Positions 28,516-40,057 of a stretch of DNA of 64,000 nucleotides are shown here, in pieces. Position 1 is the stretch's first letter. The number at the start of each line of letters is the position of its first letter. Origin of the DNA: Rebecca billardiae RCC1528 (taxonomy: Eukaryota > Protista > Haptophyta); the NCBI GenBank assembly GCA_965240325.2, contig OZ251226.1:1426001-1490000 (forward strand). The letters run 5' to 3'. The notes under the pieces are model-generated. The model searched no databases and was not told the DNA's origin. It saw only the letters and a list, made by a program, of their open reading frames with translations. The translations under genes and the position numbers were made by a program.

Positions 28516-29508
28516 ATGTCGCGCCCCGACCATGTCTTCAAGCTGCTGCTCGTCGGGGATGCAGGCGTGGGCAAATCGTCGATGCTGCTGCGATTCACCG
28601 ACGACACGTTCGAGGAGCACATGGCGTCGACGATCGGCGTCGATTTCAAGGTGAAGACGCTTCGGATCGGCGAGCTGACCGTGAAGCTGACCATCTGGGA
28701 CACCGCGGGGCAGGAGCGCTTCCGCACGCTCACGAGCAGCTACTATCGCGGCTGTCAGGGAATCATACTCGTGTTCGATCTGACACGCGCAGACACGCTC
28801 ACCAATGTGCAGACATGGCTGAAGGAAATTGACGTGTTCACCGCGCCGCCCGTGCCCGTCAAGCTTCTGGTGGGCAACAAGGTGCGCGCGGTGGCAGTAC
28901 GGCCCGCGTCTCGCGCTCGTCGCGGGGCGCGCGTTCCGCCGGCCTGGCGCGGGCTGGCTGAGACACTCGCCTGTGTCGCGCGCCCGCGTGCAGGCGGACC
29001 TGGCCGACCAGCGCGCGGTGAAGGACGAGGAGGCCCTCGACTTCGCGCGCAAGCAAGGGATGCTGTACCTCGAGGCGTCCGCGAAGACGCGTGCCGGCAT
29101 CCGGCAGGCATTCGAGGAGGTGCGGGGTGGGGCGCGAGCGCACGCGGCATGTTGCCGCGCTTCGCGCGAGCCGTGCGCGACACGTTCTTGTCGGGGTCGC
29201 GCGGGGCCGCGCGGCGTGGAGGCGCACGCCCTCGCGCCCTCGCGCCGGTGCTACGCGCGCCGACATCTCCACGCCTCCCTGGCGTGGCTGACCGTGCACG
29301 GCGCGCCCGGCTGCGACGGCGCGCTCGCGCCGGCCTCGACGCGCAGGCGGTGCGACGCATCCTGGACACCCCCGCGCTGCTGGTGGACACGCACGTCGGC
29401 GGCGGGGCTGCCGGTGGCGACGCAGGGCAGGGCGGCAGTAGAGGCTCGATCCATCTGACCGCGCCTGCGGACCCGCGCGATGCTGAGGGTCGTGGCTGCG
29501 CCTGCTGA
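28516..29508 (+). CDS. RAB18: Rab18/RabC-family small GTPase; exons 28516-28881, 28994-29119, 29347-29508
   Basis: [39 protein letters not shown] across a splice junction, EASAKT and a C-terminal CAC (CXC prenylation motif). Confidence 0.92.
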
Positions 29509-29788
29509 GTGGTTGTCAGACGTGCAGGTCCAGGACGACATTCACTCAGACTAATAAGACTCGGAGTTGAGAGCCGGTACTTTAGGTACCAGGTACCTGT
29601 AGTGGACGCCGTACTTTACCGGAGGGCGCGGTATCGTAGCCGGCTAGCCGCGCGTGCATCGTGGAATCGGAAATCGGAAAGGGAGTCCCTCCCTTGGTGG
29701 GTGGAGTCGTCCCGACTCCCCCGCCGGCGCCCGGCGGCCATTTTTCACGCGCCCGCCTTCGCCGCAGCACTGTGGGCAAGCTCACAAC

Positions 29789-31054
29789 ATGTTCAACCCA
29801 TCGCAGGCGACGAAGCGCACCAGTGGCAACGGCGCTAAGAGTACGCTGTCCGAGAATGAGAAGCGGCTGCGCGAGGTGTTCGACATGATCGACAGGGATA
29901 GGTCGGGCAAGATCAGCGCGCGCGAGCTCGCGGTCACGCTTAGGATGCAGGGGCAGGAGATCAGCGACTCGGAGGTGGCTGAGATCCTCAAGCTCATGGA
30001 TGAGGACCACGACGGCTCGACGCTCTCGTTCGAGGAGTTCAAGCATATCTTCGCGGCCGCTGAGCTCTCGGACCATGAGCTGAGCACGACCGAGATCACG
30101 CGCGAACTCTCGCAGCACGCTCGCGCCCTGCACATGCAGGTGCTGACGCAGCACGGCTTCACGCCACTCTGGGAGACACTCGAGCGCGAGCGCGCGGCGC
30201 AACCGCCCGCGGGCGAGAGCCAGGCGCACAAGACGCGCGACGCGTGGGGACGCGCGCGGATGCAGCTCGCGAAGCTGATCGACTCGGACAAGGTGCAGGC
30301 GGTGCTCTTCGTGCTCGTCGTGTTGGACATGTTCGTCATCTGGGGCGAGCTGCTACTCGTCTTCACCGCGTGCAAGAACGACGAGTACTGCGAGGCGCAC
30401 GGCTGCCACATCGACGGCTCAGAGCACCACCTGCGCGCGCTGGCGGAGAGCTCGAGTGCCAGCGAGGACGATGACGAGACCGTCTTCGATCTGGGCGGGC
30501 TGTCGGACAAGCAGCACAAGTGGGAGGTGGTGCTGCACTCCATCTCGCTCAGCATCCTCGGCCTGCTGGGCCTGCACATCGTGCTCACCTTGGTCGCCTA
30601 CGGTGCGCGCACGCGATGCGGCCGATCGCCGCGCTCCGTCTGCCCCCAGCTCCGCGCACTCACCGCAGGCATGTGCGCGCTGCCCCCGCGCCCTCGCGGC
30701 CGGCGCCCGCCGCGCACCGTAGGCCGCGCGTTCTTTCGCAACCCGTTCTACATCTTCGACATGATCGTCGTCGGCGCCGCGTTGGGGATGGAGGCGGCGC
30801 ACATCTCGGCGGGCCCGCTCGTGGTCGTGCTGATGAGCTGGCGCGTGCTGCGGATCGCGCACGCTGCCTTCATCGCGTACGAAGTGCAGCACCACTCCAA
30901 GCACAAGTCCAAGGCCAAGGCGGCGCATCGTGCGCGCTTCGTGGAGAAGATGAAATACCACCATGCGCAGCGCGCGCAGAGTGCAGACGGCGGAGAGAGT
31001 CTCAAAAAGGGCTCCGGCTTCACCGCGGTGGTCGTAGAGGCGGCCGCCTCATGA
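29789..31054 (+). CDS. EF-hand pair fused to Hv1-like voltage-sensor/proton channel domain; probable intron 30603-30722
   Basis: EF loops DRDRSGKISARE and DEDHDGSTLSFEE. S1 is VLFVLVVLDMFVIWGELLL (Asp at ~30326), S2 LHSISLSILGLLGLHIVL, S3 YIFDMIVVGAAL, and S4 VVVLMSWRVLRIAH. No pore domain follows. Confidence 0.82.
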   Translation: MFNPSQATKRTSGNGAKSTLSENEKRLREVFDMIDRDRSGKISARELAVTLRMQGQEISDSEVAEILKLMDEDHDGSTLSFEEFKHIFAAAELSDHELSTTEITRELSQHARALHMQVLTQHGFTPLWETLERERAAQPPAGESQAHKTRDAWGRARMQLAKLIDSDKVQAVLFVLVVLDMFVIWGELLLVFTACKNDEYCEAHGCHIDGSEHHLRALAESSSASEDDDETVFDLGGLSDKQHKWEVVLHSISLSILGLLGLHIVLTLVAYGARTRCGRSPRSVCPQLRALTAGMCALPPRPRGRRPPRTVGRAFFRNPFYIFDMIVVGAALGMEAAHISAGPLVVVLMSWRVLRIAHAAFIAYEVQHHSKHKSKAKAAHRARFVEKMKYHHAQRAQSADGGESLKKGSGFTAVVVEAAAS

Positions 31055-31554
31055 CGAGTCCCGACGAGATTCACGACCGGCCGTGCCCGTGACGGCCGTC
31101 TAACTTGAACTTGCTCACGACCGGCGCACGGCCGCTCCGCGTGGCACCGCCAGGATCTTATTCTAATAATAATATTTTTTAAAGCTGATGTGATCAGGAC
31201 TCAGTACTGTGTGCGTCTGCGGAGTACCCGGGGCCTGCCGCGGAGTGCCGCGGTCTCGGAACTTCCGCCGGCGGTGCGGCCCCTACCAGTAGTTACACGG
31301 ACGAGGAGCTTAGACGGCATACGAGTATAGCCCGTTACGGCCTGCTCGCTGCGCTCACAGAGGAACGAGGGACAGCGGCCGTTACGGGCTAGACGACATG
31401 CATCGTCGTAGCTAGCTACGATCTCGCCCGCCTGAGCTGTGTGCGTCTCTTATTCTGAGTAAACTGTATGCGGGAATTGATTCTGACAAAACAGTCCGGA
31501 GCCTTCTGAGCGCCGCGGCGGCCAGCGGGTCCGGAGTCGCGTGGGCGGTGCGGG

Positions 31555-32160
31555 ATGACGGTCATCAGCCGGATGACGCTCATCAACCACTTCGTGCGGC
31601 TCTTCATGCTGATCGCGCTCGCCCTTCCGGTGTCGCACGCGTACCATGGCTTGCCGGGTCGCGTGCAGCTTGCCTCCCCCGTCATCTCGCGCGCTCCCCG
31701 TCGCCATCGCAGGGCGGCCATCACGTCTGTTGACATGCCGAGCGGCCAGGAGCTCTGGGCGGCCGCGCACGACGCGTGGGAGAGCGTGAGGGCGAGGGTG
31801 ATCTTCGAGCGCGGCGCGCTGCGGATTCTCGACCCTGACCTCGCCGCGTTCGTTGGCGGCGCGGTGGGTGTGATTGGCACCGTCGAGTCCATCATGGCTC
31901 GCCGGCGTGCCGTGCGCGATCGGCTGACGTGCGTCTACTGCGACGGCTCCGGCTCGCTGGGCTGCGGCGTGTGCTTCGGAACAGGCATCGGGAGCGACGG
32001 CCTGCCGTGCGGCGCGTGCTCGGGCACGGGCAAGGTGGACTGCGTCTCCTGCCAGGGCTCGGGTAACTCCGTGCTCCTGGCTGAGGACCGCAACCTGATC
32101 CGCGAGCTCGCCGGGCTCGGCACGATGACGGGCGAGCTCGAAACGGAGATCGACCGCTGA
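31555..32160 (+). CDS. ORANGE-like DnaJ-type zinc-finger protein with plastid presequence (alternative start 31573)
   Basis: Signal peptide (LFMLIALALPVSHA) followed by an Arg-rich transit peptide. AAFVGGAVGVIGT matches the ORANGE SFxGGAVGV motif. There are four CxxCxGxG repeats: CVYCDGSG, CGVCFGTG, CGACSGTG and CVSCQGSG. Confidence 0.8.
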   Translation: MTVISRMTLINHFVRLFMLIALALPVSHAYHGLPGRVQLASPVISRAPRRHRRAAITSVDMPSGQELWAAAHDAWESVRARVIFERGALRILDPDLAAFVGGAVGVIGTVESIMARRRAVRDRLTCVYCDGSGSLGCGVCFGTGIGSDGLPCGACSGTGKVDCVSCQGSGNSVLLAEDRNLIRELAGLGTMTGELETEIDR

Positions 32161-32896: not shown

Positions 32897-35800
32897 ATGG
32901 CGAGCGGCGCGCTCGCTACCCTTCTCGGTGCAGGCGTGATGACGGGTGGATCGTCACGCATCGCCCCTGCCCCCACCAGCCTCATCCGTCTCGACCTCGG
33001 CCGGCTTGACGCCAGCAACGCATCCTCACTCGCCGCGGTGCACGGCATCGCAGGCGCGCCGCCGCGCATGTGCGTGGGGCGCGACGAGTTCAACACGAGC
33101 CTGGCCATCGTGCCGTGTGACGAGGCCCGGGCCGAGTGGGCCGGCTCGCCCGTCTCCCAGCTCCGCCTCGTCAGCCCGTCCGAGAACCTCGCGGAGGGGC
33201 TGAAGCGGCACCTGCTCCTTTCATTTGGCGGCCGCCGCCGGGCGCGCGCCGCGCACGCGGCGGCGGCGGGCTCGCCCGCGACGCCGCTCCTCGTGTCCGA
33301 TCCCGAAGGGTTCTCCTGCCTCGGCACGCGCCGCGGCTGGTTCGGCGGCGACGGCGCGCCCGCGCTCGTCGCGTGCGAGTCGAGCCGGCGGCGCGCTTGG
33401 ACGGTGCAGACGCCGCCGCCGCCAGACGGCAAGTGCAGCGTGCTCACGCCGACGGCGCCGCCGTCGCCGCCTGGCTGGAGGGACGACGCGGCGCGGCTCG
33501 CGCCCGATCGCGTGCTCTGCCTCGGCCGCGCGGGCGAGCGCTGCCTCGCGCGCGTCGCGCCGCGCAAGGGCGCGCGCGGCGTGTGGCCGCTGGCACCCGC
33601 CGGGCCCATCACACCGCCTGCGTGGCTCGCGACGCGGCTGGTGCGCGGCGCGAGCAAGCAGCGCTTCGCGATGGTGCCGCGCAAGGGCCAGCGCGGCCGC
33701 ACGCTCGCCGGCGTCCGGCCGGCCACCAGCCCGGACATCGACCCGGACTGGGACGAGGAGGACGAGCTGCCGGCGGCCGCGGGCGCGCAGACCGGCTTTG
33801 GCGCCGCGCGCGCGGAGGGCAACGCGACCGTGCGCGCCGACGGCACGGTGGAGTGCGCGCGGGGCGCGGAGACGGCGGAGTGCGCCGCGGCGTGCGCCAT
33901 TCGCGTCAGCGCCAACGCCTCCAACGCGTCGGCGGGCGGCGAGACCGAGTGCGCCGCCGCCGCCGCGGGCGCGCGCGCGGCGTGCGCGGCGGCGCACGCG
34001 GCCGCGCAGGGCGACGGCAGCGTGCTCGGTGGCGGCGGCTCGGCGGCGGCGGCGCTGGGCGGCGGCGGCGGCGGCGCCGGCTCGTGGAGCCGCGCGTCGA
34101 TCTGTGCCGCGCTCGTCATGCTCTTCTGCGCCGCCGTCCTCTTCTGGGAGCTCGTGCGCCCGGCGGCCGCGCGGCTGCAACCGCTGCTCGGCGCAGGCAA
34201 GGCGGCGGGCGCCAGCGCGGACGAGTCGGGGCGGCCGGCGCCGCCGCCCGAGCACGCGCCGCCGCGGCCCGGGCGCGTGGCGGCGGTGGCGGCGGCGGCG
34301 GAGGAGGCGGCCGCGCCCTCGCCGCCCTCGCCGCGCGACTCCCCGCCGCGCGAGCCGCCCACCAGCCCCGAGGCGCTCACCACGGACGCGGCCATGTCGC
34401 AGGTCGAGGCGGCGTTGGCACGCGTCGAGATAGTGCAGGCGGCCGCGGCCGCGGCGCTCGCGGCGGCGGAGGAGGAGGCGCGCGCGGACGAGGCGACGGC
34501 GGCGGTGCTCGCGACCGCGCGCGAGCTCCGGCTCAGCTCGCCGCGCACACCGCGCGGCAGCGCGCACGCCGAGAGCGGCAGCGCCGCCGCCGCCGCGGAC
34601 GACGAGCGCACGCCTGCCTCGGGCGCGTCCACGCCTCCGGGGCCGGCGCGGCCGACGGCGGACGTGGGCGGCGGCGGCGGCGCGGCGGCGATGGTGGAGG
34701 CGGGGTTGGCGTCGGGCGCGGCGGGGGTGCGCGTGACGCCGATGCGCGCGCCGCCGCCCGTCGCCGCCGCCGCCGCCTCGCGCCGCGGCCCGGCCCTCGC
34801 CCACGACGTGGCCGAGCAGCCGGCGCCGCAGGTGGCGGAGGCGGCGATGGCGCGCGCGGCCGCGGCCGCGGCCGCGGCCGCGCGCGCCGCGCAGCTTGCG
34901 AAGGGCGAGGCGGACGGCGACGAGGGCTCGGAGGAGGCGGAGGACGACGATGCGGACGAGGACACCGAGGGGCCGATGCCGGGCTCGTCGCCCGAGCCCG
35001 CCTCCAAGCACGCGCCCGCCCAGCCGGCGGGCAGCGGCAGCGGCAGCGCGGCCGACGGCTTGAGCGGAGCCGCCAAGCCCGCGGCCGCGGCCGTGGCCGC
35101 GGCCGGCGGCGCCGCCGCCGCCGCCGGCGTCGCGGCGTGCGCCGCCGCCACCGCCGCCGCGGCGCGCAGCTGGCCCGCCGTCGCGCCGAGTGCGAGCGAG
35201 GCGAGCAAGCTCGCCGCGACCACCGACGTCACCGCCCTCAGCGCGCCCGAGCCCGCGCCCGAGCCCGCCGCCGAGGGCGAGGCCGCGGTGAGCGGCGCGC
35301 GCGCGCGCGCGCTCGCCGCCCTCGCCGCTCTGGGCAAGGACGAGGCCGCCGCCGCCGCGGCGAAGGGCGGGCCGCGGGGCGGGCTGGGGCGGGCAAAGAC
35401 GATGGGCGGCTCGAGCTCTGCCGCGCCGGGCGGCGCGCGCGGCGTGGGCACGATGGCCGCCGCCGCCGCCACCGCCGCATGCGGCTACACGGACACGGCG
35501 CGCGCTTGCCTGAGCGGAGGCGGCGGCGCGCGGCCGGGCGGCGCGGGCGCGCGCCGGCCCGCCGAGGCGGCGCAGCGCGTGTCGCGCGCGATCGCAGAGT
35601 CGACCGTCGCGTCGGCGATGAGCTCGGCGGTGCGCGCGGCCGTCGAGCGCGCGGCGAGCGCCGCGGGGCAGCCCTCCGCCGAGGCCGCGCCCGCCGCGCT
35701 CCACCCGCGCCGCGCCGCCGCCGCCGCCTCGGCCGCCGCGGCCGCGCGCGCCGGCTACCAGCCGTTCCTGCGCAGCAGCACGGGCGGCGGCGGCGGCGAG

Positions 35801-38800
35801 GGGAGCGGCGGGCGCGCGAGGGCGCAGCCGCACCCGGCGGCGACGCCGTCGCGCAGCTCGGCGCCGCCCGCGCCGTACGCCGCCGCGTCGGACGCGGACG
35901 AGGCGGCGGCACACGGCGCTGCGGCCGGCGCCGCCGCGCACGAGGGCGCGGGCGCGGGCGCGGGCGAGCGCGCGTCGGCGGGCACGCCGCCCGCGGCCGT
36001 GCGCGCCGCGCCCGGCCCGCTCCGGCCGCACCACTCCGCCGTCCGCCCGCCGCCCGCCGCGCGCTGGCAGATGCAGATGCAGGGCGCGCCGGGCGCCGCG
36101 CGCGACGCGCGCGCGCACTCCAGCGGCGGCTGCTCCTCTGCGACGCACACGCCCACCGCTGCGTCGCGCGCCACGTCTGAGCAGCTGTCTGCCGGCGGGC
36201 TGCTGCTGTCCGGCACGTCGGCGGCGACGACGGCGACGCCGCCGGGCGGGCCGACGCCGATGTGGCGGGACACGCGCGCGCGCGCCAGCGCCGCCGGCGC
36301 GGAGAGCGCGCCCACCTCGTCACTCCACTCGCCGCCGTCCGCCGACGCGTCGCTCGCGTCCGCGCGACACACGACCGCCGACAACTCCGCCTCCGAGCTG
36401 GACAACCCGAGCTGCACCGACGCGGGCGCGGGCGGCGGCGGCGGCGCGCCGGCGGGCAAGAAGCTGAAGGGGCGCGACTCCGCCGGCACGCCCTCGACCA
36501 TCAACTCGCCGCAGCCCGAGGCCGACGGCGCGCGCCGGCTGCCGACACCCGCAAGCAGCTCGCCGCTGCACGCGCGCCGCGCGCGCTCGCCGGCCGCCGT
36601 GCAGACGCCGTATGCGCGCCGCGAGGAGGAAGAGGAGGAGGAGGCGGCGGGCGGCAGCGGCGCGGGCGGTGCGCCGCGCGCCGGCTCGGCGCAGCCCGCC
36701 GCGCTCCCGCCGCCGCCCGGCGACGACGTCCTCGAGGCGATGGCGCCCCTCTTCGAGTTTGGCAGCGGGCGCGACGAGACGGGCCGCGCGCACGCCGACG
36801 CGCCGCTCGAGTTTGCGCCGCTGCCCGCCACGCCGGAGGGCGTGCGCGCGGCGGCGCAGCGCGCGGCGTCGGACTCGCTCGACCACGACGGCGGCGGGAC
36901 GGAGCGGCGCGAGGCGCTCGAGAACTCCGCCGTCGCCGCGTACCACTACCGCGAGGGCATGCGCGCCAACACGGAAGGCGCGACCGCGCGCGCAGCGGGT
37001 CACTTCTCGGCGTCGCTCGTCGTGTGGCCGTCGGTGCCGACGCTTCTCTCGCTCGCCAACATGCACCTCAAGCTCGGGGGGCCGTGCGCGGTGCGCGCGT
37101 GCGCGGCGAGCCGCGGCCGCCGCCGCAGCCGTGCCGCGCGCCTCGCTGCCCGCTCAGCAGACCCGCGGCCGCGCCGCCGGCCGCCCGCTCGGCCCGCCGG
37201 CCTGCCTGCTGCGCGCCACGCCCCGCGCTGCTGACGGCTCGATCTGACCGGCCCCCGCCCTCTCCCGCGTCGCCGCGCCCGCGCCGTGCGTCTGTGCGTG
37301 TGTCGCGCCCGCGCTCTCGGCGCGCGCCCGTCGCGGCTGGCGCGCGCGCAGGCGGTGGCGGAGGCGGTGTACCGCGCGCTGCTGCGGCGCGGCGCGCCCT
37401 CCGACTCGGCCGCCCTGTCTGTGGATGGCTCGGTGCTCGGCTCGGCCGCGGTCGTCGAGCTGACCTCGGGCCAGCGCCGGCTGCTGCGGCGCAAGCTGGA
37501 CGAGGTGCGCGCGCCGCGCGGCCCAGGCGCGCGGGCCGCGAGCCGAGAGCCCGCGCGGCCGCACCGCCGCCGCACCGCGCGCGCGCAGCAGCCGCTCGCG
37601 CGCCCTCGCGCCTGGGCCACGCGGCGCGCGCCTGCCCGCCGCCCCGCCCGCCGCCATCCCACCGCCATCCCCGCCCCTCCGCCGCCCCTCGGCTGCGCCC
37701 GGCCGCTCCCCACGGCGCGCGACGCGCAGGTCGCCGAGCGGAAGCGCAAGTCGGTGCAGTCGCTCCGCCGGCGCTCCGAGCCCAGCGCGCTCGCCGCCGT
37801 CGCGTCCACCGTGCCCGCGCGCAGCGCGCGGATCGAGGCGGCGGCGGACGCGGCGGTCACGTGGCTGGCGGTGCACGCGCTGCGGCAGCGCTCGCTCCGG
37901 GTGCGCTTCTCGCTCGCGGACTCGGTGGCGCCGCAGCCCTCGCCCGCCGGCGCGCGCTCCGGCGCGGGCTTCAGCCTGTTCGACCCGCTGCTCGGCGCGG
38001 AGGCGAGCTCGATCGCGGGCGCGGGCAGCACGCCAGGAGCACTGCTCACGCCCGGCAGAGCGGGCGCGCGCGGGTTTGGCGCGGCGGCGGCGGGTGGCGG
38101 CGGCGCGGGCGGCGCGCCGAGCCCGGGCGGCGGCGCGGGCGGCAGCGGCAAGCGCTCGCGCTCCACGCCGCGCGCGTCCACGATGCGCCGCACCGCGTCC
38201 TCGCCGGCGGTGCGCGTCGACGCCGAGGCTTCGGCCGACGCGGGCGGCGCGGGCCGCACCCTCTCCATCCCCGGCTCGGCCGCCGCGCTCAGCGCCGCCG
38301 CCGAGTCGAGCCGGCGCGCCGAGGTGTCGGAGCTGGTCCGGAGGTACGAGGAGATTGCGCAGGCGCGGCGCGCGTCGAGGGAGGCGGCGGAGGGCGGGCT
38401 CTCGCCGCCGCCCAAGCGCGCGAGCGCGGGCGACGCGGAGGCGGAGGGCGGCGCCGACGCGGACGCGTCCACCGCCACCACGCCCGGCCGCACGCGCACC
38501 GGCGGCAGCTTTGCCGCCTCGCCCGGCGCGGAGACGGAGCGGCGCGTGCAGTTTGCCAGGCACGGCACGTCGGGCTCGTTGCTCGCCTCGCCCGTCTCGC
38601 AGCGCCGCCAGCCGCGCCTCCGCGCCGCGTCCGTCGCCGACCTGCGCGAGTCGGTGCTCGCGCCGCCCATGTCGCGCGAGGAGGCGGAGGCGCACGCCGC
38701 GGCGGAGGCGGAGGTGGAGGCGCACATGGCCGCGGCGATGCGCGCCGCGGCGGAGGGCGGCGGCGGCAGCGACGGCGGCGGCGGCAGCGCGCTCTCGTCG

Positions 38801-39357
38801 CCGCCCGCCTCCGGCGCCGCCAGGCGGCGCACGCGCACGCGCAGCGGCAGGATGCGCGCCACCGCGGAGGAGGCGGAGGACGAGAGCCTCGACGCGGCGC
38901 TGCCCGACGGGCTCGCGCCGTCGCCGAGCGGCAAGGCGCCCTCCACCACCTCGTCGTCCGGCCGGCGGCGCAGCCGCGCCCACCTCGAGCCGCACGCGGA
39001 CAGCCCGTCGCCGGCGGCGCGGAGCCGCGGCTGGCGCGCGCTCCGCCCCGCCGTGCGCCTCGGCGCGCAGCTCTCCGCGCGCGCGATGCTCGCGCAGCGG
39101 TACGCGGACGAGGCCGAGCACGTCGCCGCCGAGGCGACCGAGGACCTGCTCGGCCGCCGGATCGACCAGCTCATCGCCAGCCAGCGGCGCACCACCACGA
39201 CGCGCGGCGGCGGCGGCGGCGGCGGCCGGCGCTCGGGCGGCGCCGCGTCGGCCGCGTCGGGCAGCACCGACGTGGTCGGCGGCTGGCGCTTCGTCGACGA
39301 CGACGACGAGGAGAGCGGCTCGGAGGCGGCCGAGAGCGACGGCGAGGACGGCTTTGA

Positions 39358-39396
<39 letters not shown>

Positions 39397-40057
39397 GCTG
39401 ATGGACGAGGAGGAGGAGGCCGCGCGGCAGCGGGGCGCGGCGCGGCGCAAGGGCACCGCCGTGCCGGGCCACTTTGCGTTCGTCGACGCGGCGCTCGACG
39501 ACATGGGCGGCTCGGGCAGCTCGCGGCGCGCCTCCACGTCCGCGCCGCAGTTTGTGAGCGCGCTGCCGAGCCGCCGCCCGTCCGTGGCGCGCGGCGCCGA
39601 GCCGCCGCGCCCGACGCGGCGCGGGGCCTCGATGCTCCTCTCGAAGAAGGGCGCGGCGGGCGGCGGCTCGTTTGGCGTGCCGCCGCGCCGCGCGAGCGCG
39701 TGCGCGTACGGCGGCACGCACTCGGCGCACGCGCACACGCACTCGCAGGCCATGGCCGCCGCGGTCGCCATCGCGGCCGCGGGCATGGACGAGGACTCCG
39801 ACTCGTCCGTGCCCTCCTCCGCCGCCGGCTTCGCCGGCGACACTCGGTACACCACGTCGGTCCCGCCGCCCGTGCCGTACGGCGTGCAGATGGGCACGGC
39901 CGTGGCCGCGCGCGCGGCGGGCGGGCGGCAGCTCTCCCGCCCGACCAACGACGTCGTGCGCGTCGGCCTCGGCCTCCCGCCAAAGATCGGCAGCGCCGGC
40001 ACCTCCGCGTCGTCGGAGGGCTCGAGGGGCGCGGCGCCGTGGAAGCGCGGCCGATGA
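32897..40057 (+). CDS. Giant (~2220 aa) Ala/Pro/Gly-rich single-pass membrane protein with Cys-rich ectodomain and a TPR-like unit; exons 32897-37090, 37352-37504, 37730-40057
   Basis: Two long ORFs are joined in frame by GT-AG introns. The N-terminal region has spaced C..W motifs reminiscent of ricin-B, plus N-glycosylation sequons. The TM segment is SICAALVMLFCAAVLFWELV. The TPR-like unit is YREGMRAN...HFSASLVVWPSVPTLLSLANMHLKLG. An acidic tract lies at ~39300-39420. Confidence 0.65.

What the first reader, a model, noticed from the sequence alone, without database searches (positions are those of the whole stretch)
29789..31054. EF-hand-fused Hv1-like channel with a two-arginine S4
Seen: a calmodulin-like EF pair N-terminal to a poreless four-helix domain. 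The S1 Asp is present. S4 reads M-S-W-R-V-L-R-I-A-H rather than the Hv signature R-x-W-R-x-x-R, so the first Arg is lost. The S2 acidic countercharge appears replaced by His, and the S1-S2 loop and C-terminus are His-rich. Known: Hv1 selectivity depends on the S1 Asp and S4 Arg residues, typical Hv1 channels lack EF hands, and Hv channels handle pH homeostasis in marine algae. Inference: a Ca2+-regulated, weakly voltage-dependent proton channel or sensor linking Ca2+ signals to pH.
Basis: partly seen in the sequence, partly recalled or inferred. Interest (0 to 1): 0.72.

Follow-up and report, generated by a model that had tools for sequence, protein, structure and literature searches.

The report
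Calcium-sensor-fused proton-channel relative, two-arginine S4
This alga has a real gene that joins a calcium-binding module to a pore-less proton-channel-type voltage sensor lacking one gating charge pair; relatives occur in several groups of marine protists, I found no paper describing them, and they may let calcium signals open a proton pathway.

Summary
It encodes an N-terminal EF-hand pair (Pfam EF-hand_7, E 2.6e-15), a helical linker and an Hv1-type S1-S4 domain with no pore.

- **Kept Hv1 residues:** S1 Asp, E119, H140, D174, D185 (as Glu), W207, R208 and R211 equivalents.
- **Changed:** R205 (R1) is Met, E153 is His, F150 is Leu.

An exhaustive search found 130 relatives. Of the 117 with an S4 motif, 77 lack R1. 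In the 48 complete sensors, R1 and the S2 Glu are kept or lost together in 47. EF-hands occur only in R1-less proteins (20 of 77 against 0 of 40), and all mapped ones fall in one tree group. That group includes transcript-derived proteins, a dinoflagellate and the dictyochophyte Florenciella.

A profile of the group hits solved Hv1 structures (E 1.6e-20) far better than any other voltage sensor (1.5e-10).

R1-less Hv channels that conduct protons are already known from plants and from Aplysia Hv3. I found no paper on the EF-hand fusion or this protist group.

Calcium gating and proton conduction are inferred, not shown. Verdict: a new variant of a known kind, and directly testable.

The parts
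29789..30602 (+). Exon 1: start codon, EF-hand pair, helical linker, S1, S1-S2 loop, S2
   Evidence: ORF. GC at codon positions 1/2/3 shows coding periodicity, e.g. 0.65/0.31/0.95 in S1-S2, and none upstream of the ATG. The N-terminus aligns with that of P0001.
30603..30722 (+). In-frame intron (GT..AG, 120 nt, phase 1) between S2 and S3
   Evidence: No codon periodicity, 0.78/0.83/0.83. Absent from all relatives, including transcript-derived ones. L001 has an intron at the same place and phase, 1382-1513. AF2 pLDDT is under 50 here. The PDB alignments skip it.
30723..31054 (+). Exon 2: S2-S3 turn, S3, S4, C-terminal helix, His/Lys-rich tail, stop codon
29858..30052 (+). EF-hand pair (residues 24-88)
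   Evidence: Pfam EF-hand_7 E 2.6e-15. pLDDT above 90. Foldseek matches single calmodulin/troponin C lobes, TM by target 0.75-0.86.
29891..29926 (+). EF loop 1, DRDRSGKISARE: canonical 12-residue loop (D1, D3, S5, G6, I8, E12)
   Evidence: Read from the sequence. The loop is conserved across the group.
29999..30037 (+). EF loop 2, DEDHDGSTLSFEE: 13 residues, one more than canonical
   Evidence: Read from the sequence. Most members of the group have the same extra residue.
30086..30280 (+). Helical linker (residues 100-164) with the conserved G-F/Y-T-P-L-W motif (residues 123-128, nt 30155-30172)
   Evidence: AF2 helices 100-123, 127-137 and 146-164, with pLDDT of 75-92 in ten-residue blocks. 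The P-L-(W/Y/F) motif is conserved in the EF-bearing group.
30287..30364 (+). S1 helix (residues 167-192), with Asp180 (30326-30328, equivalent to D112) and Glu187 (30347-30349, equivalent to E119)
30365..30505 (+). Extracellular or luminal S1-S2 loop, rich in Cys and His (T-A-C-x5-C-x4-C-H...)
   Evidence: A T-x-C start and further Cys residues are conserved in the R1-less group.
30506..30601 (+). S2 helix (residues 240-271), with His250 (equivalent to H140), Leu260 (F150) and His263 (E153, 30575-30577)
30743..30796 (+). S3 helix (residues 319-336), with Asp324 (equivalent to D174) and Glu335 (D185). His338 follows in the S3-S4 loop.
30815..30883 (+). S4 helix, with Met349 (R205 position, 30833-30835), Trp351, Arg352 (R2), Arg355 (R3) and His358 (N214 position)
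30884..31051 (+). C-terminal helix continuous with S4 (to about residue 400), then a His/Lys-rich tail
   Evidence: AF2 helix 343-400. Sequence.

Best explanation
**Shown.**
- The gene is real and has two exons.
- It encodes a cytosolic N-terminal EF-hand pair joined by a conserved helical linker to an Hv1-type voltage-sensor domain that has no separate pore.
- The residues that make the Hv1 proton pathway are all present: the S1 Asp, the S4 Trp, R2 and R3, and the D174 and D185 positions.
- The outermost gating charge R1 is Met, and its S2 partner E153 is His. The same pair is gone across a whole protist group that carries the EF-hands.

**Inferred.**
- The protein is a proton channel that conducts through its voltage sensor, as Hv1 does.
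- With R1 and the closed-state countercharge missing, its voltage dependence is shallow and its activation range is shifted.
- Much of the control has passed to the EF-hand module. On binding Ca2+, that module would grip the conserved linker helix just before S1 and bias S1/S4 towards the open state.
- A cytosolic Ca2+ rise would then open a proton pathway.
- His263 at the inner countercharge site may add sensitivity to cytosolic pH.
- His250, His338 and the Cys/His-rich outer loop may give a site for Zn2+ or external pH.
For: **The gene is real.**
- Coding periodicity in both exons, none in the intron or the 5' flank.
- P0001/L001 is 49% identical in global alignment, with the identity concentrated in the exons. 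It has an intron at the same position and phase.

**Domains.**
- EF-hand_7 E 2.6e-15.
- AF2 model with mean pLDDT 76.6, confident EF, linker and S1-S4.
- Voltage-sensor fold, Z 12.8.

**It belongs on the Hv1 branch.**
- Best PDB sequence hits are Hv1: 3wkv at 1.5e-4 for the single sequence.
- With a 31-sequence profile, 3wkv scores 1.6e-20 and 5oqk 1.6e-18 over S1-S4. The next hit, a Cav sensor, scores 1.5e-10 and covers only part.
- The nearest ESM Atlas cluster is named 'Voltage-gated hydrogen channel 1' (score 0.90).

**Key residues** are tabulated.

**The family.**
- 130 relatives were found.
- Of the 117 with an S4 motif, 77 lack R1.
- In the 48 complete sensors, the E153 position is Glu in 10 of 10 R1-bearing rows. 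In the 38 R1-less rows it is Gln in 31, His in 6 and Asp in 1.
- EF-hands are found in 20 of 77 R1-less proteins and 0 of 40 R1-bearing ones.
- All EF-bearing rows fall in one 31-row tree group, SH-aLRT 86.
- Short representatives without an EF-hand have longer cluster members that carry one.
- EF loop 1 is canonical and conserved across the group.

**One transcript.** MMETSP and EukProt transcript ORFs hold both domains.

**Functional precedent from papers.**
- Neutralising E153 shifts activation by -55 to beyond -100 mV, and R205A/N/Q channels still conduct (PMC4969798).
- AcHv3, which lacks R1, is proton-selective, leaky and weakly voltage-dependent (PMC10911540).
- Plant Hv channels lack both R1 and the S2 FxxE motif yet are working proton channels (PMC10657467).
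Against: - No current, Ca2+ binding or localisation has been measured for any member of this group.
- EF loop 2 has 13 residues, so only one site is clearly canonical.
- A single EF pair, half a calmodulin, may act structurally or in assembly rather than as a switch.
- F150 is Leu and E153 is His only in the window's small sub-group (the window protein, P0001, P0002, P0004). Its behaviour may differ from the Gln-bearing majority.
- No RNA data for this organism could be found. The only run held four short low-depth contigs that do not cross the intron. Splicing and expression here are therefore inferred.
- Deep branches of the tree are weakly supported.
- The EF-linker contact is a guess. The model's coordinates could not be inspected.
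Confidence: 0.5

Rival explanations
1. It is a working Hv-type proton channel, but the EF-hand pair is not a Ca2+ switch. It serves as a constitutive structural, dimerisation or targeting domain, or binds a partner protein. Gating would remain by voltage and pH, merely shallower, as in plant Hv channels and AcHv3.
For: - EF loop 2 is non-canonical at 13 residues.
- Some members have degenerate EF loops, for example the P0028 cluster with H-E-D-N-S-G, which the EF search did not detect.
- R1-less Hv channels work without any EF-hand (PMC10657467, PMC10911540).
Against: - EF loop 1 keeps every Ca2+-ligand position (D1, D3, S5, E12) across most of the group despite about 30% overall identity. That argues for selection on Ca2+ binding.
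- The linker before S1 is conserved and confidently helical.
Confidence: 0.25
2. It does not conduct. It is a stand-alone voltage/Ca2+ sensor that regulates another protein, or a Ca2+-binding membrane anchor. Non-conducting Hv1 relatives such as TMEM266/HVRP1 would be the comparison; their non-conduction is recalled from my own knowledge and was not checked here.
For: - The defining RxWRxxR signature and the FxxE charge-transfer motif are both broken.
- Pfam Ion_trans scores are below the curated cut-off.
Against: - The residues needed for proton selectivity and conduction in Hv1 (S1 Asp with R2/R3, and Trp207) are invariant in the group.
- Natural channels with the same two losses conduct protons (PMC10657467, PMC10911540).
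Confidence: 0.17
3. It is an artefact: a pseudogene, or two adjacent genes (an EF-hand protein and a voltage-sensor protein) read as one because stop codons are rare in 68% G+C DNA.
For: - In such G+C-rich DNA long ORFs arise by chance, and many overlapping ORFs are listed here.
- No RNA evidence exists for this locus.
Against: - Coding periodicity is continuous from the ATG through the EF-hands, linker, S1 and S2 in one exon.
- The same fusion is found in an orthologue at 49% identity and in at least 20 further clusters, several from transcriptomes.
Confidence: 0.03

Closest known systems
Hv1 / HVCN1 voltage-gated proton channels (human, mouse, Ciona; coccolithophore EhHv1 and CpHv1)
   Same: - Four-helix voltage sensor without a pore domain.
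- S1 Asp selectivity filter; E119, H140, D174, D185, W207, R208 and R211 equivalents.
- S4 runs on into a long C-terminal helix.
- The protist-type His three residues after R3 (RxxH, PMC10377628).
- Best sequence match among all solved structures.
   Different: - R205 (R1) is Met, E153 is His and F150 is Leu.
- There is an N-terminal EF-hand pair with a conserved linker. I found no paper reporting this for any Hv1.
- The S1-S2 loop is long and rich in Cys and His.
Aplysia AcHv3 (LPWRxxR), the 'unconventional' mollusc Hv channels (PMC10911540, PMC10377628)
   Same: - A natural hydrophobic residue at R1.
- Large intracellular domains and a long S1-S2 loop.
- Proton-selective with very weak voltage dependence, which is the behaviour predicted here.
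   Different: - AcHv3 has a Pro before the Trp, and no EF-hand is reported for it.
- It is an animal lineage. Common descent with the protist group was not tested, since no named AcHv3 sequence was available here.
Land-plant Hv channels AtHv1 and PsHv1, (S/N)LWRxxR (PMC10657467)
   Same: [quoted passage not shown] This is the same pair of losses seen here.
   Different: - No EF-hand.
- AtHv1 needs mechanical priming.
- The R1 position is Ser or Asn there, and Leu or Met here.
Channels and oxidases with built-in EF-hands (plant TPC1, NOX5/DUOX)
   Same: A cytosolic EF-hand module in the same chain as a membrane domain confers Ca2+ activation. AtTPC1 appears among the structural matches that span both EF and voltage-sensor parts, though at high rmsd.
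   Different: In TPC1 the EF-hands lie between two six-helix pore-forming repeats. NOX5 is an electron transporter. Neither is a pore-less voltage sensor.

Membership tests
Hv1 / HVCN1 voltage-gated proton channel | Four transmembrane helices (S1-S4) forming a voltage-sensor domain with no S5-S6 pore domain | tested here: met
   AF2 helices 167-192, 240-271, 319-336 and 343-400, with nothing but a tail after S4. Voltage-sensor domains top the structure search, Z 12.8.
Hv1 / HVCN1 voltage-gated proton channel | Acidic selectivity-filter residue in mid-S1 (Asp112 in human) | tested here: met
   Asp180 aligns to D112 in 3wkv and 5oqk. It is invariant in the 31-row family alignment.
Hv1 / HVCN1 voltage-gated proton channel | S4 signature R-x-W-R-x-x-R (three arginines with Trp207) | tested here: not met
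   S4 reads M-S-W-R-V-L-R. R1 is Met349, while W, R2 and R3 are present.
Hv1 / HVCN1 voltage-gated proton channel | S2 charge-transfer motif F-x-x-E (F150, E153) | tested here: not met
   The motif reads L-G-L-H, with Leu260 and His263.
Hv1 / HVCN1 voltage-gated proton channel | Inner and outer S3 acidic residues (D174, D185) | tested here: met
   Asp324 and Glu335.
Hv1 / HVCN1 voltage-gated proton channel | Closer in sequence to Hv1 than to the voltage sensors of Kv, Nav, Cav or VSP | tested here: met
   Profile against PDB: Hv1 entries 1.6e-20 and 1.6e-18 over S1-S4; the next hit is Cav at 1.5e-10; Ci-VSP scores 1.2e-6.
Hv1 / HVCN1 voltage-gated proton channel | C-terminal coiled coil that makes the dimer | tested here: inconclusive
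   S4 continues as one helix to about residue 400. Coiled-coil propensity and dimer formation were not computed.
Hv1 / HVCN1 voltage-gated proton channel | Proton-selective conductance gated by voltage and the pH gradient | not testable with these tools
   Needs patch clamp.
EF-hand Ca2+-binding proteins (calmodulin-like pair) | Paired helix-loop-helix motifs recognised by curated profiles | tested here: met
   EF-hand_7 at 57 bits against a cut-off of 30. EF-hand_1, _5, _6 and _8 are also above their cut-offs. The fold matches calmodulin lobes.
EF-hand Ca2+-binding proteins (calmodulin-like pair) | Canonical 12-residue loop with ligands at positions 1, 3, 5 and 12 and Gly at 6 | tested here: inconclusive
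   Loop 1 (DRDRSGKISARE) meets it. Loop 2 (DEDHDGSTLSFEE) has one extra residue, as in most of the group.
EF-hand Ca2+-binding proteins (calmodulin-like pair) | Binds Ca2+ at physiological concentrations | not testable with these tools
   Needs ITC, a 45Ca overlay or a mobility-shift assay.
R1-less natural Hv channels (plant Hv, AcHv3) | Non-basic residue at R1 with W, R2 and R3 retained | tested here: met
   Met349. The motifs of the known channels are taken from PMC10657467 and PMC10911540.
R1-less natural Hv channels (plant Hv, AcHv3) | Common descent with plant or mollusc R1-less channels | not tested
   No named plant or Aplysia sequence was in hand. The tree held only unnamed database proteins.

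The most novel reading that the evidence does not exclude
A whole group of marine-protist proton channels (haptophyte, dinoflagellate, dictyochophyte and others) has exchanged part of its voltage lock for a built-in Ca2+ sensor. The lock is the R1-E153 salt bridge that holds Hv1 closed.

These would be the first Ca2+-gated proton channels. They would turn a cytosolic Ca2+ transient directly into a proton flux or a pH signal. In the window's sub-group, a titratable His at the inner countercharge site would add cytosolic pH sensing.
Probability: 0.35. Interest if true: 0.85.

Novelty: new variant of a known kind. Interest (0 to 1): 0.7.

Why it matters
Hv1 channels are known to be gated by voltage and the pH gradient, and proton channels underlie calcification in coccolithophores and the flash of dinoflagellates.

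I found no paper describing a proton channel directly controlled by Ca2+.

This group was probably overlooked because database screens for Hv channels use the RxWRxxR signature (PMC10377628), which it fails.

If the EF-hands gate the channel, there would be a direct link between Ca2+ signalling and pH or membrane-potential control in major marine phytoplankton groups.

The group would also be a natural experiment on what the R1-E153 pair does in voltage sensing. In 47 of 48 complete sensors the two charges are kept or lost together.

The protein is small (381 aa) and has no known partners, so standard expression and patch clamp can test it.

Tried and rejected
- **Word-index protein search.** Both the whole ORF and the sensor region alone returned only one relative, P0001, because EF-hand words saturated the candidate list. 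The exhaustive search was needed.
- **Metagenome locus scan** with the two-sequence alignment found only unrelated EF-hand genes.
- **Sequencing runs.** One run of unknown kind held a fifth of the sampled words. Its four short contigs (29735-30275 and 31069-31321) do not reach the intron, so they say nothing about splicing or expression.
- **Foldseek with the whole model** returned only calmodulin-like lobes. The voltage-sensor match came from VIA-align.
- **Pfam Ion_trans** is below its cut-off for this protein, so Pfam alone would not call the sensor.
- **Paralogues in the window:** none.
- **Organism.** It could not be identified with these tools. 'Haptophyte' comes from earlier notes of the scan and was not checked.
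- **Spliced model.** The two exons were never joined. The model therefore carries a 40-residue intron-encoded loop between S2 and S3.
- **Literature.** Six full-text searches found no paper on an EF-hand-bearing Hv channel. Subscription-only papers are not covered, for example the 2018 survey of dinoflagellate Hv1.
Full report
**The gene**

The window is G+C-rich (0.58-0.85) and has spliced genes, so it is eukaryotic DNA. Earlier notes of this scan call the organism a haptophyte; I did not verify that.

On the + strand an ORF runs from 29654 to 31054, and its first ATG is at 29789. G+C by codon position shows strong coding periodicity from 29789 onwards: position 2 at 0.31-0.48 and position 3 at 0.88-0.95. 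There is none in the 135 nt before the ATG.

The periodicity collapses to 0.78/0.83/0.83 between 30602 and 30724. That stretch begins with GT at 30603 and ends with AG at 30722. It is 120 nt long, so it stays in frame. It encodes an Arg/Pro-rich 40-residue insert that no relative has and that AlphaFold leaves unstructured.

The one close relative is P0001, on metagenome contig L001. It has an intron at exactly this position and phase (L001 1382-1513). It also has a second intron (971-1099) that splits the codon of the S1 aspartate, cta g|ac.

I therefore read the gene as two exons, 29789-30602 and 30723-31054, giving 381 residues. Everything below used the unspliced ORF or single exons by reference, and residue numbers are those of the unspliced 421-residue reading.

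The gene lies between a Ras/Rab-family GTPase gene that ends at 29508 and an unrelated ORF that starts at 31555.

**The observation**

Residues 24-88 are an EF-hand pair (EF-hand_7, E 2.6e-15; four other EF-hand models also score above their cut-offs). In the model they match single calmodulin or troponin C lobes.
- Loop 1 (DRDRSGKISARE) is canonical.
- Loop 2 (DEDHDGSTLSFEE) has 13 residues.

The C-terminal half gives its best PDB sequence matches to the two solved Hv1 structures (3wkv at 1.5e-4, 5oqk at 0.23).

The AlphaFold model was built on 54 aligned relatives and has mean pLDDT 76.6 and pTM 0.66. It has helices at 167-192, 240-271, 319-336 and 343-400 and nothing resembling S5-S6.

An all-against-all structural comparison puts voltage-sensor domains on top:
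- Ci-VSP: Z 12.8, rmsd 2.1 over 124 residues.
- Nav, Cav and CatSper sensors: Z 11-12.
- Hv1 chimera 3wkv: Z 9.4 over 140 residues.

Position by position, against human Hv1 numbering:

| Human Hv1 | Window protein |
|---|---|
| D112 | Asp180 |
| E119 | Glu187 |
| H140 | His250 |
| F150 | Leu260 |
| E153 | His263 |
| D174 | Asp324 |
| D185 | Glu335 |
| R205 | Met349 |
| W207 | Trp351 |
| R208 | Arg352 |
| R211 | Arg355 |
| N214 | His358 |

The S1-S2 loop and the tail are indeed His-rich. It missed the intron, the Leu at F150 and the long second EF loop.

**The family**

The word-index search found only P0001. The exhaustive HMMER search with the sensor part found 130 representatives at E up to 1e-3.

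Of these, 117 carry a W-R-x-x-R-x-x-H/N S4 motif. Forty have Arg at R1, the classical RxWRxxR. The other 77 do not: Leu 55, Met 9, Ile 6, Thr 3, Ala 2, Val 1, Phe 1.

In the 48 sequences with a complete S1-S4:
- The S1 Asp, E119, H140, D174, D185 (Asp or Glu), W207, R208, R211 and the trailing His are kept almost without exception.
- The E153 position is Glu in all 10 R1-bearing rows.
- In the 38 R1-less rows it is Gln in 31, His in 6 and Asp in 1.

The positive charge and its inner countercharge have therefore been kept or lost together in 47 of 48 rows.

EF-hands were detected in 27 of 129 members by Pfam. Searching with the window's own EF region, they occur in 20 of 77 R1-less proteins and 0 of 40 R1-bearing ones. 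That gives Fisher p = 1.4e-4, not corrected for relatedness. Among R1-less proteins long enough to hold an N-terminal domain, 19 of 27 have one.

Three short representatives without an EF-hand turned out to have longer cluster members with one, so most EF-less rows are fragments.

On a quick maximum-likelihood tree, all EF-bearing rows fall in one group of 31 R1-less rows (SH-aLRT 86). The canonical channels form another group. Deep branches are weak.

A profile of the R1-less proteins hits Hv1 structures at 1.6e-20 and 1.6e-18 across S1-S4. The next hit is a Cav sensor at 1.5e-10, over part of the domain only. The nearest ESM Atlas cluster is named 'Voltage-gated hydrogen channel 1'.

Sources that carry names:
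- MMETSP transcripts (P0005, P0023, and P0137 marked 'type:complete').
- An uncultured dinoflagellate transcriptome (P0016).
- Florenciella sp. RCC1693, a dictyochophyte (P0139, in the cluster of P0023).

The fusion is therefore transcribed as one ORF in relatives, and it spans at least three major protist lineages if the window's organism is a haptophyte.

The window protein, P0001, P0002 and P0004 form a small sub-group with His at E153 and Leu or Met at F150.

**How it probably works**

Shown: the architecture and which residues are kept or lost.

From the literature:
- In Hv1 the S1 Asp with the S4 arginines makes the proton-selective pathway. E153 and D174 stabilise the closed state, and neutralising E153 shifts activation by -55 to more than -100 mV. 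R205 can be neutralised without loss of conduction, often with less gating charge (PMC4969798).
- Aplysia AcHv3, with Leu at R1, is proton-selective but leaky, with about 60 mV per e-fold (PMC10911540).
- Plant Hv channels lack both R1 and the S2 FxxE motif and still work as voltage-gated proton channels with shallower curves (PMC10657467).

Inference:
- The window protein conducts protons through its sensor, with a loosened closed state and shallow voltage dependence.
- The N-terminus of Hv1 is cytosolic and leads straight into S1.
- In this group, a canonical Ca2+ loop and a conserved, confidently helical linker bearing a P-L-(W/Y/F) motif have been kept at about 30% overall identity. That fits a Ca2+-dependent clamp of the EF lobe on the linker, which would bias S1/S4.
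- His263 could make the inner site sensitive to cytosolic pH.
- His250, His338 and the Cys/His-rich outer loop could form an external metal or pH site.

None of these functional steps has been measured. Among the full readings I give Ca2+-modulated proton conduction about 0.5.

**Rivals**

- A proton channel whose EF-hands are structural rather than a switch (0.25).
- A non-conducting sensor (0.17).
- An artefact of ORF calling (0.03). This last rival is contradicted by continuous coding periodicity in exon 1 and by the recurrence of the fusion.

**Comparison and novelty**

By its defining S4 signature and its S2 motif, the protein fails a strict Hv1 membership test. By fold, selectivity residue and sequence similarity it is on the Hv1 branch. 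It is best filed as an unconventional Hv-type channel.

Loss of R1, and its joint loss with FxxE in plants, is already published. The new points are:
- the EF-hand fusion;
- the existence of a broad protist group with it;
- the near-perfect coupling of R1 and E153 across that group.

Six full-text searches found no paper that describes an EF-hand-bearing Hv channel or a Ca2+-activated proton channel of this kind. The 2023 review of Hv channels across the tree of life does not mention one in its protist section, and its searches relied on the RxWRxxR motif. Subscription journals are outside the library, so an earlier mention cannot be excluded.

**Limits**

- No RNA evidence for this locus.
- The organism was not identified here.
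- The tree is unrooted, built by the quick method, and lacks named reference channels.

Noticed in passing
P0031 (398 aa) and P0128 (474 aa), hits: Each chain holds two complete canonical Hv1-type sensors: two S1 Asp motifs and two R-F-W-R-L-x-R-x-x-H S4 motifs, joined by an acidic/His-rich linker. These look like natural covalent tandem Hv1 'dimers'. P0120 looks similar, with a truncated first unit.
   Followed up: partly
L001 971-1099 and 1382-1513: The metagenome orthologue P0001 was called as one 432-aa ORF straight through two in-frame introns. The first splits the codon of the selectivity-filter Asp. The second sits at the same position and phase as the window's intron.
   Followed up: yes
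window 30365-30505 and the same loop in relatives: The S1-S2 loop of the R1-less group starts with a conserved T-x-C and holds further conserved Cys residues (Y-C-E-A-x-G-C-H in the window protein and P0001). This may be a disulfide or metal site on the outer face.
   Followed up: partly
window 34001-40000: G+C of 0.81-0.85 over 6 kb, far above the rest of the window.
   Followed up: no
window 28615-29508 (+): Ras/Rab-family small GTPase gene with introns (Pfam Ras, E 2.5e-28 on one exon), ending in ...G-C-A-C-stop, a Rab-like C-terminal Cys motif. It lies only about 280 nt upstream of the EF-Hv start codon.
   Followed up: partly
window 31555-32160 (+): A 201-aa ORF with repeated C-x-x-C-x-G-x-G motifs, like a DnaJ-type zinc finger. 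No Pfam match at E 0.01.
   Followed up: partly
P0019 (3267 aa), hit: A giant protein matched in 11 separate stretches to the S1 region of the query, with no W-R-x-x-R motif. Its nature is unknown.
   Followed up: no
P0129 (195 aa), hit: The one exception to the R1/E153 coupling: Leu at R1 but Asp at E153. It sits inside the canonical group on the tree, so it looks like a separate, recent loss of R1.
   Followed up: partly
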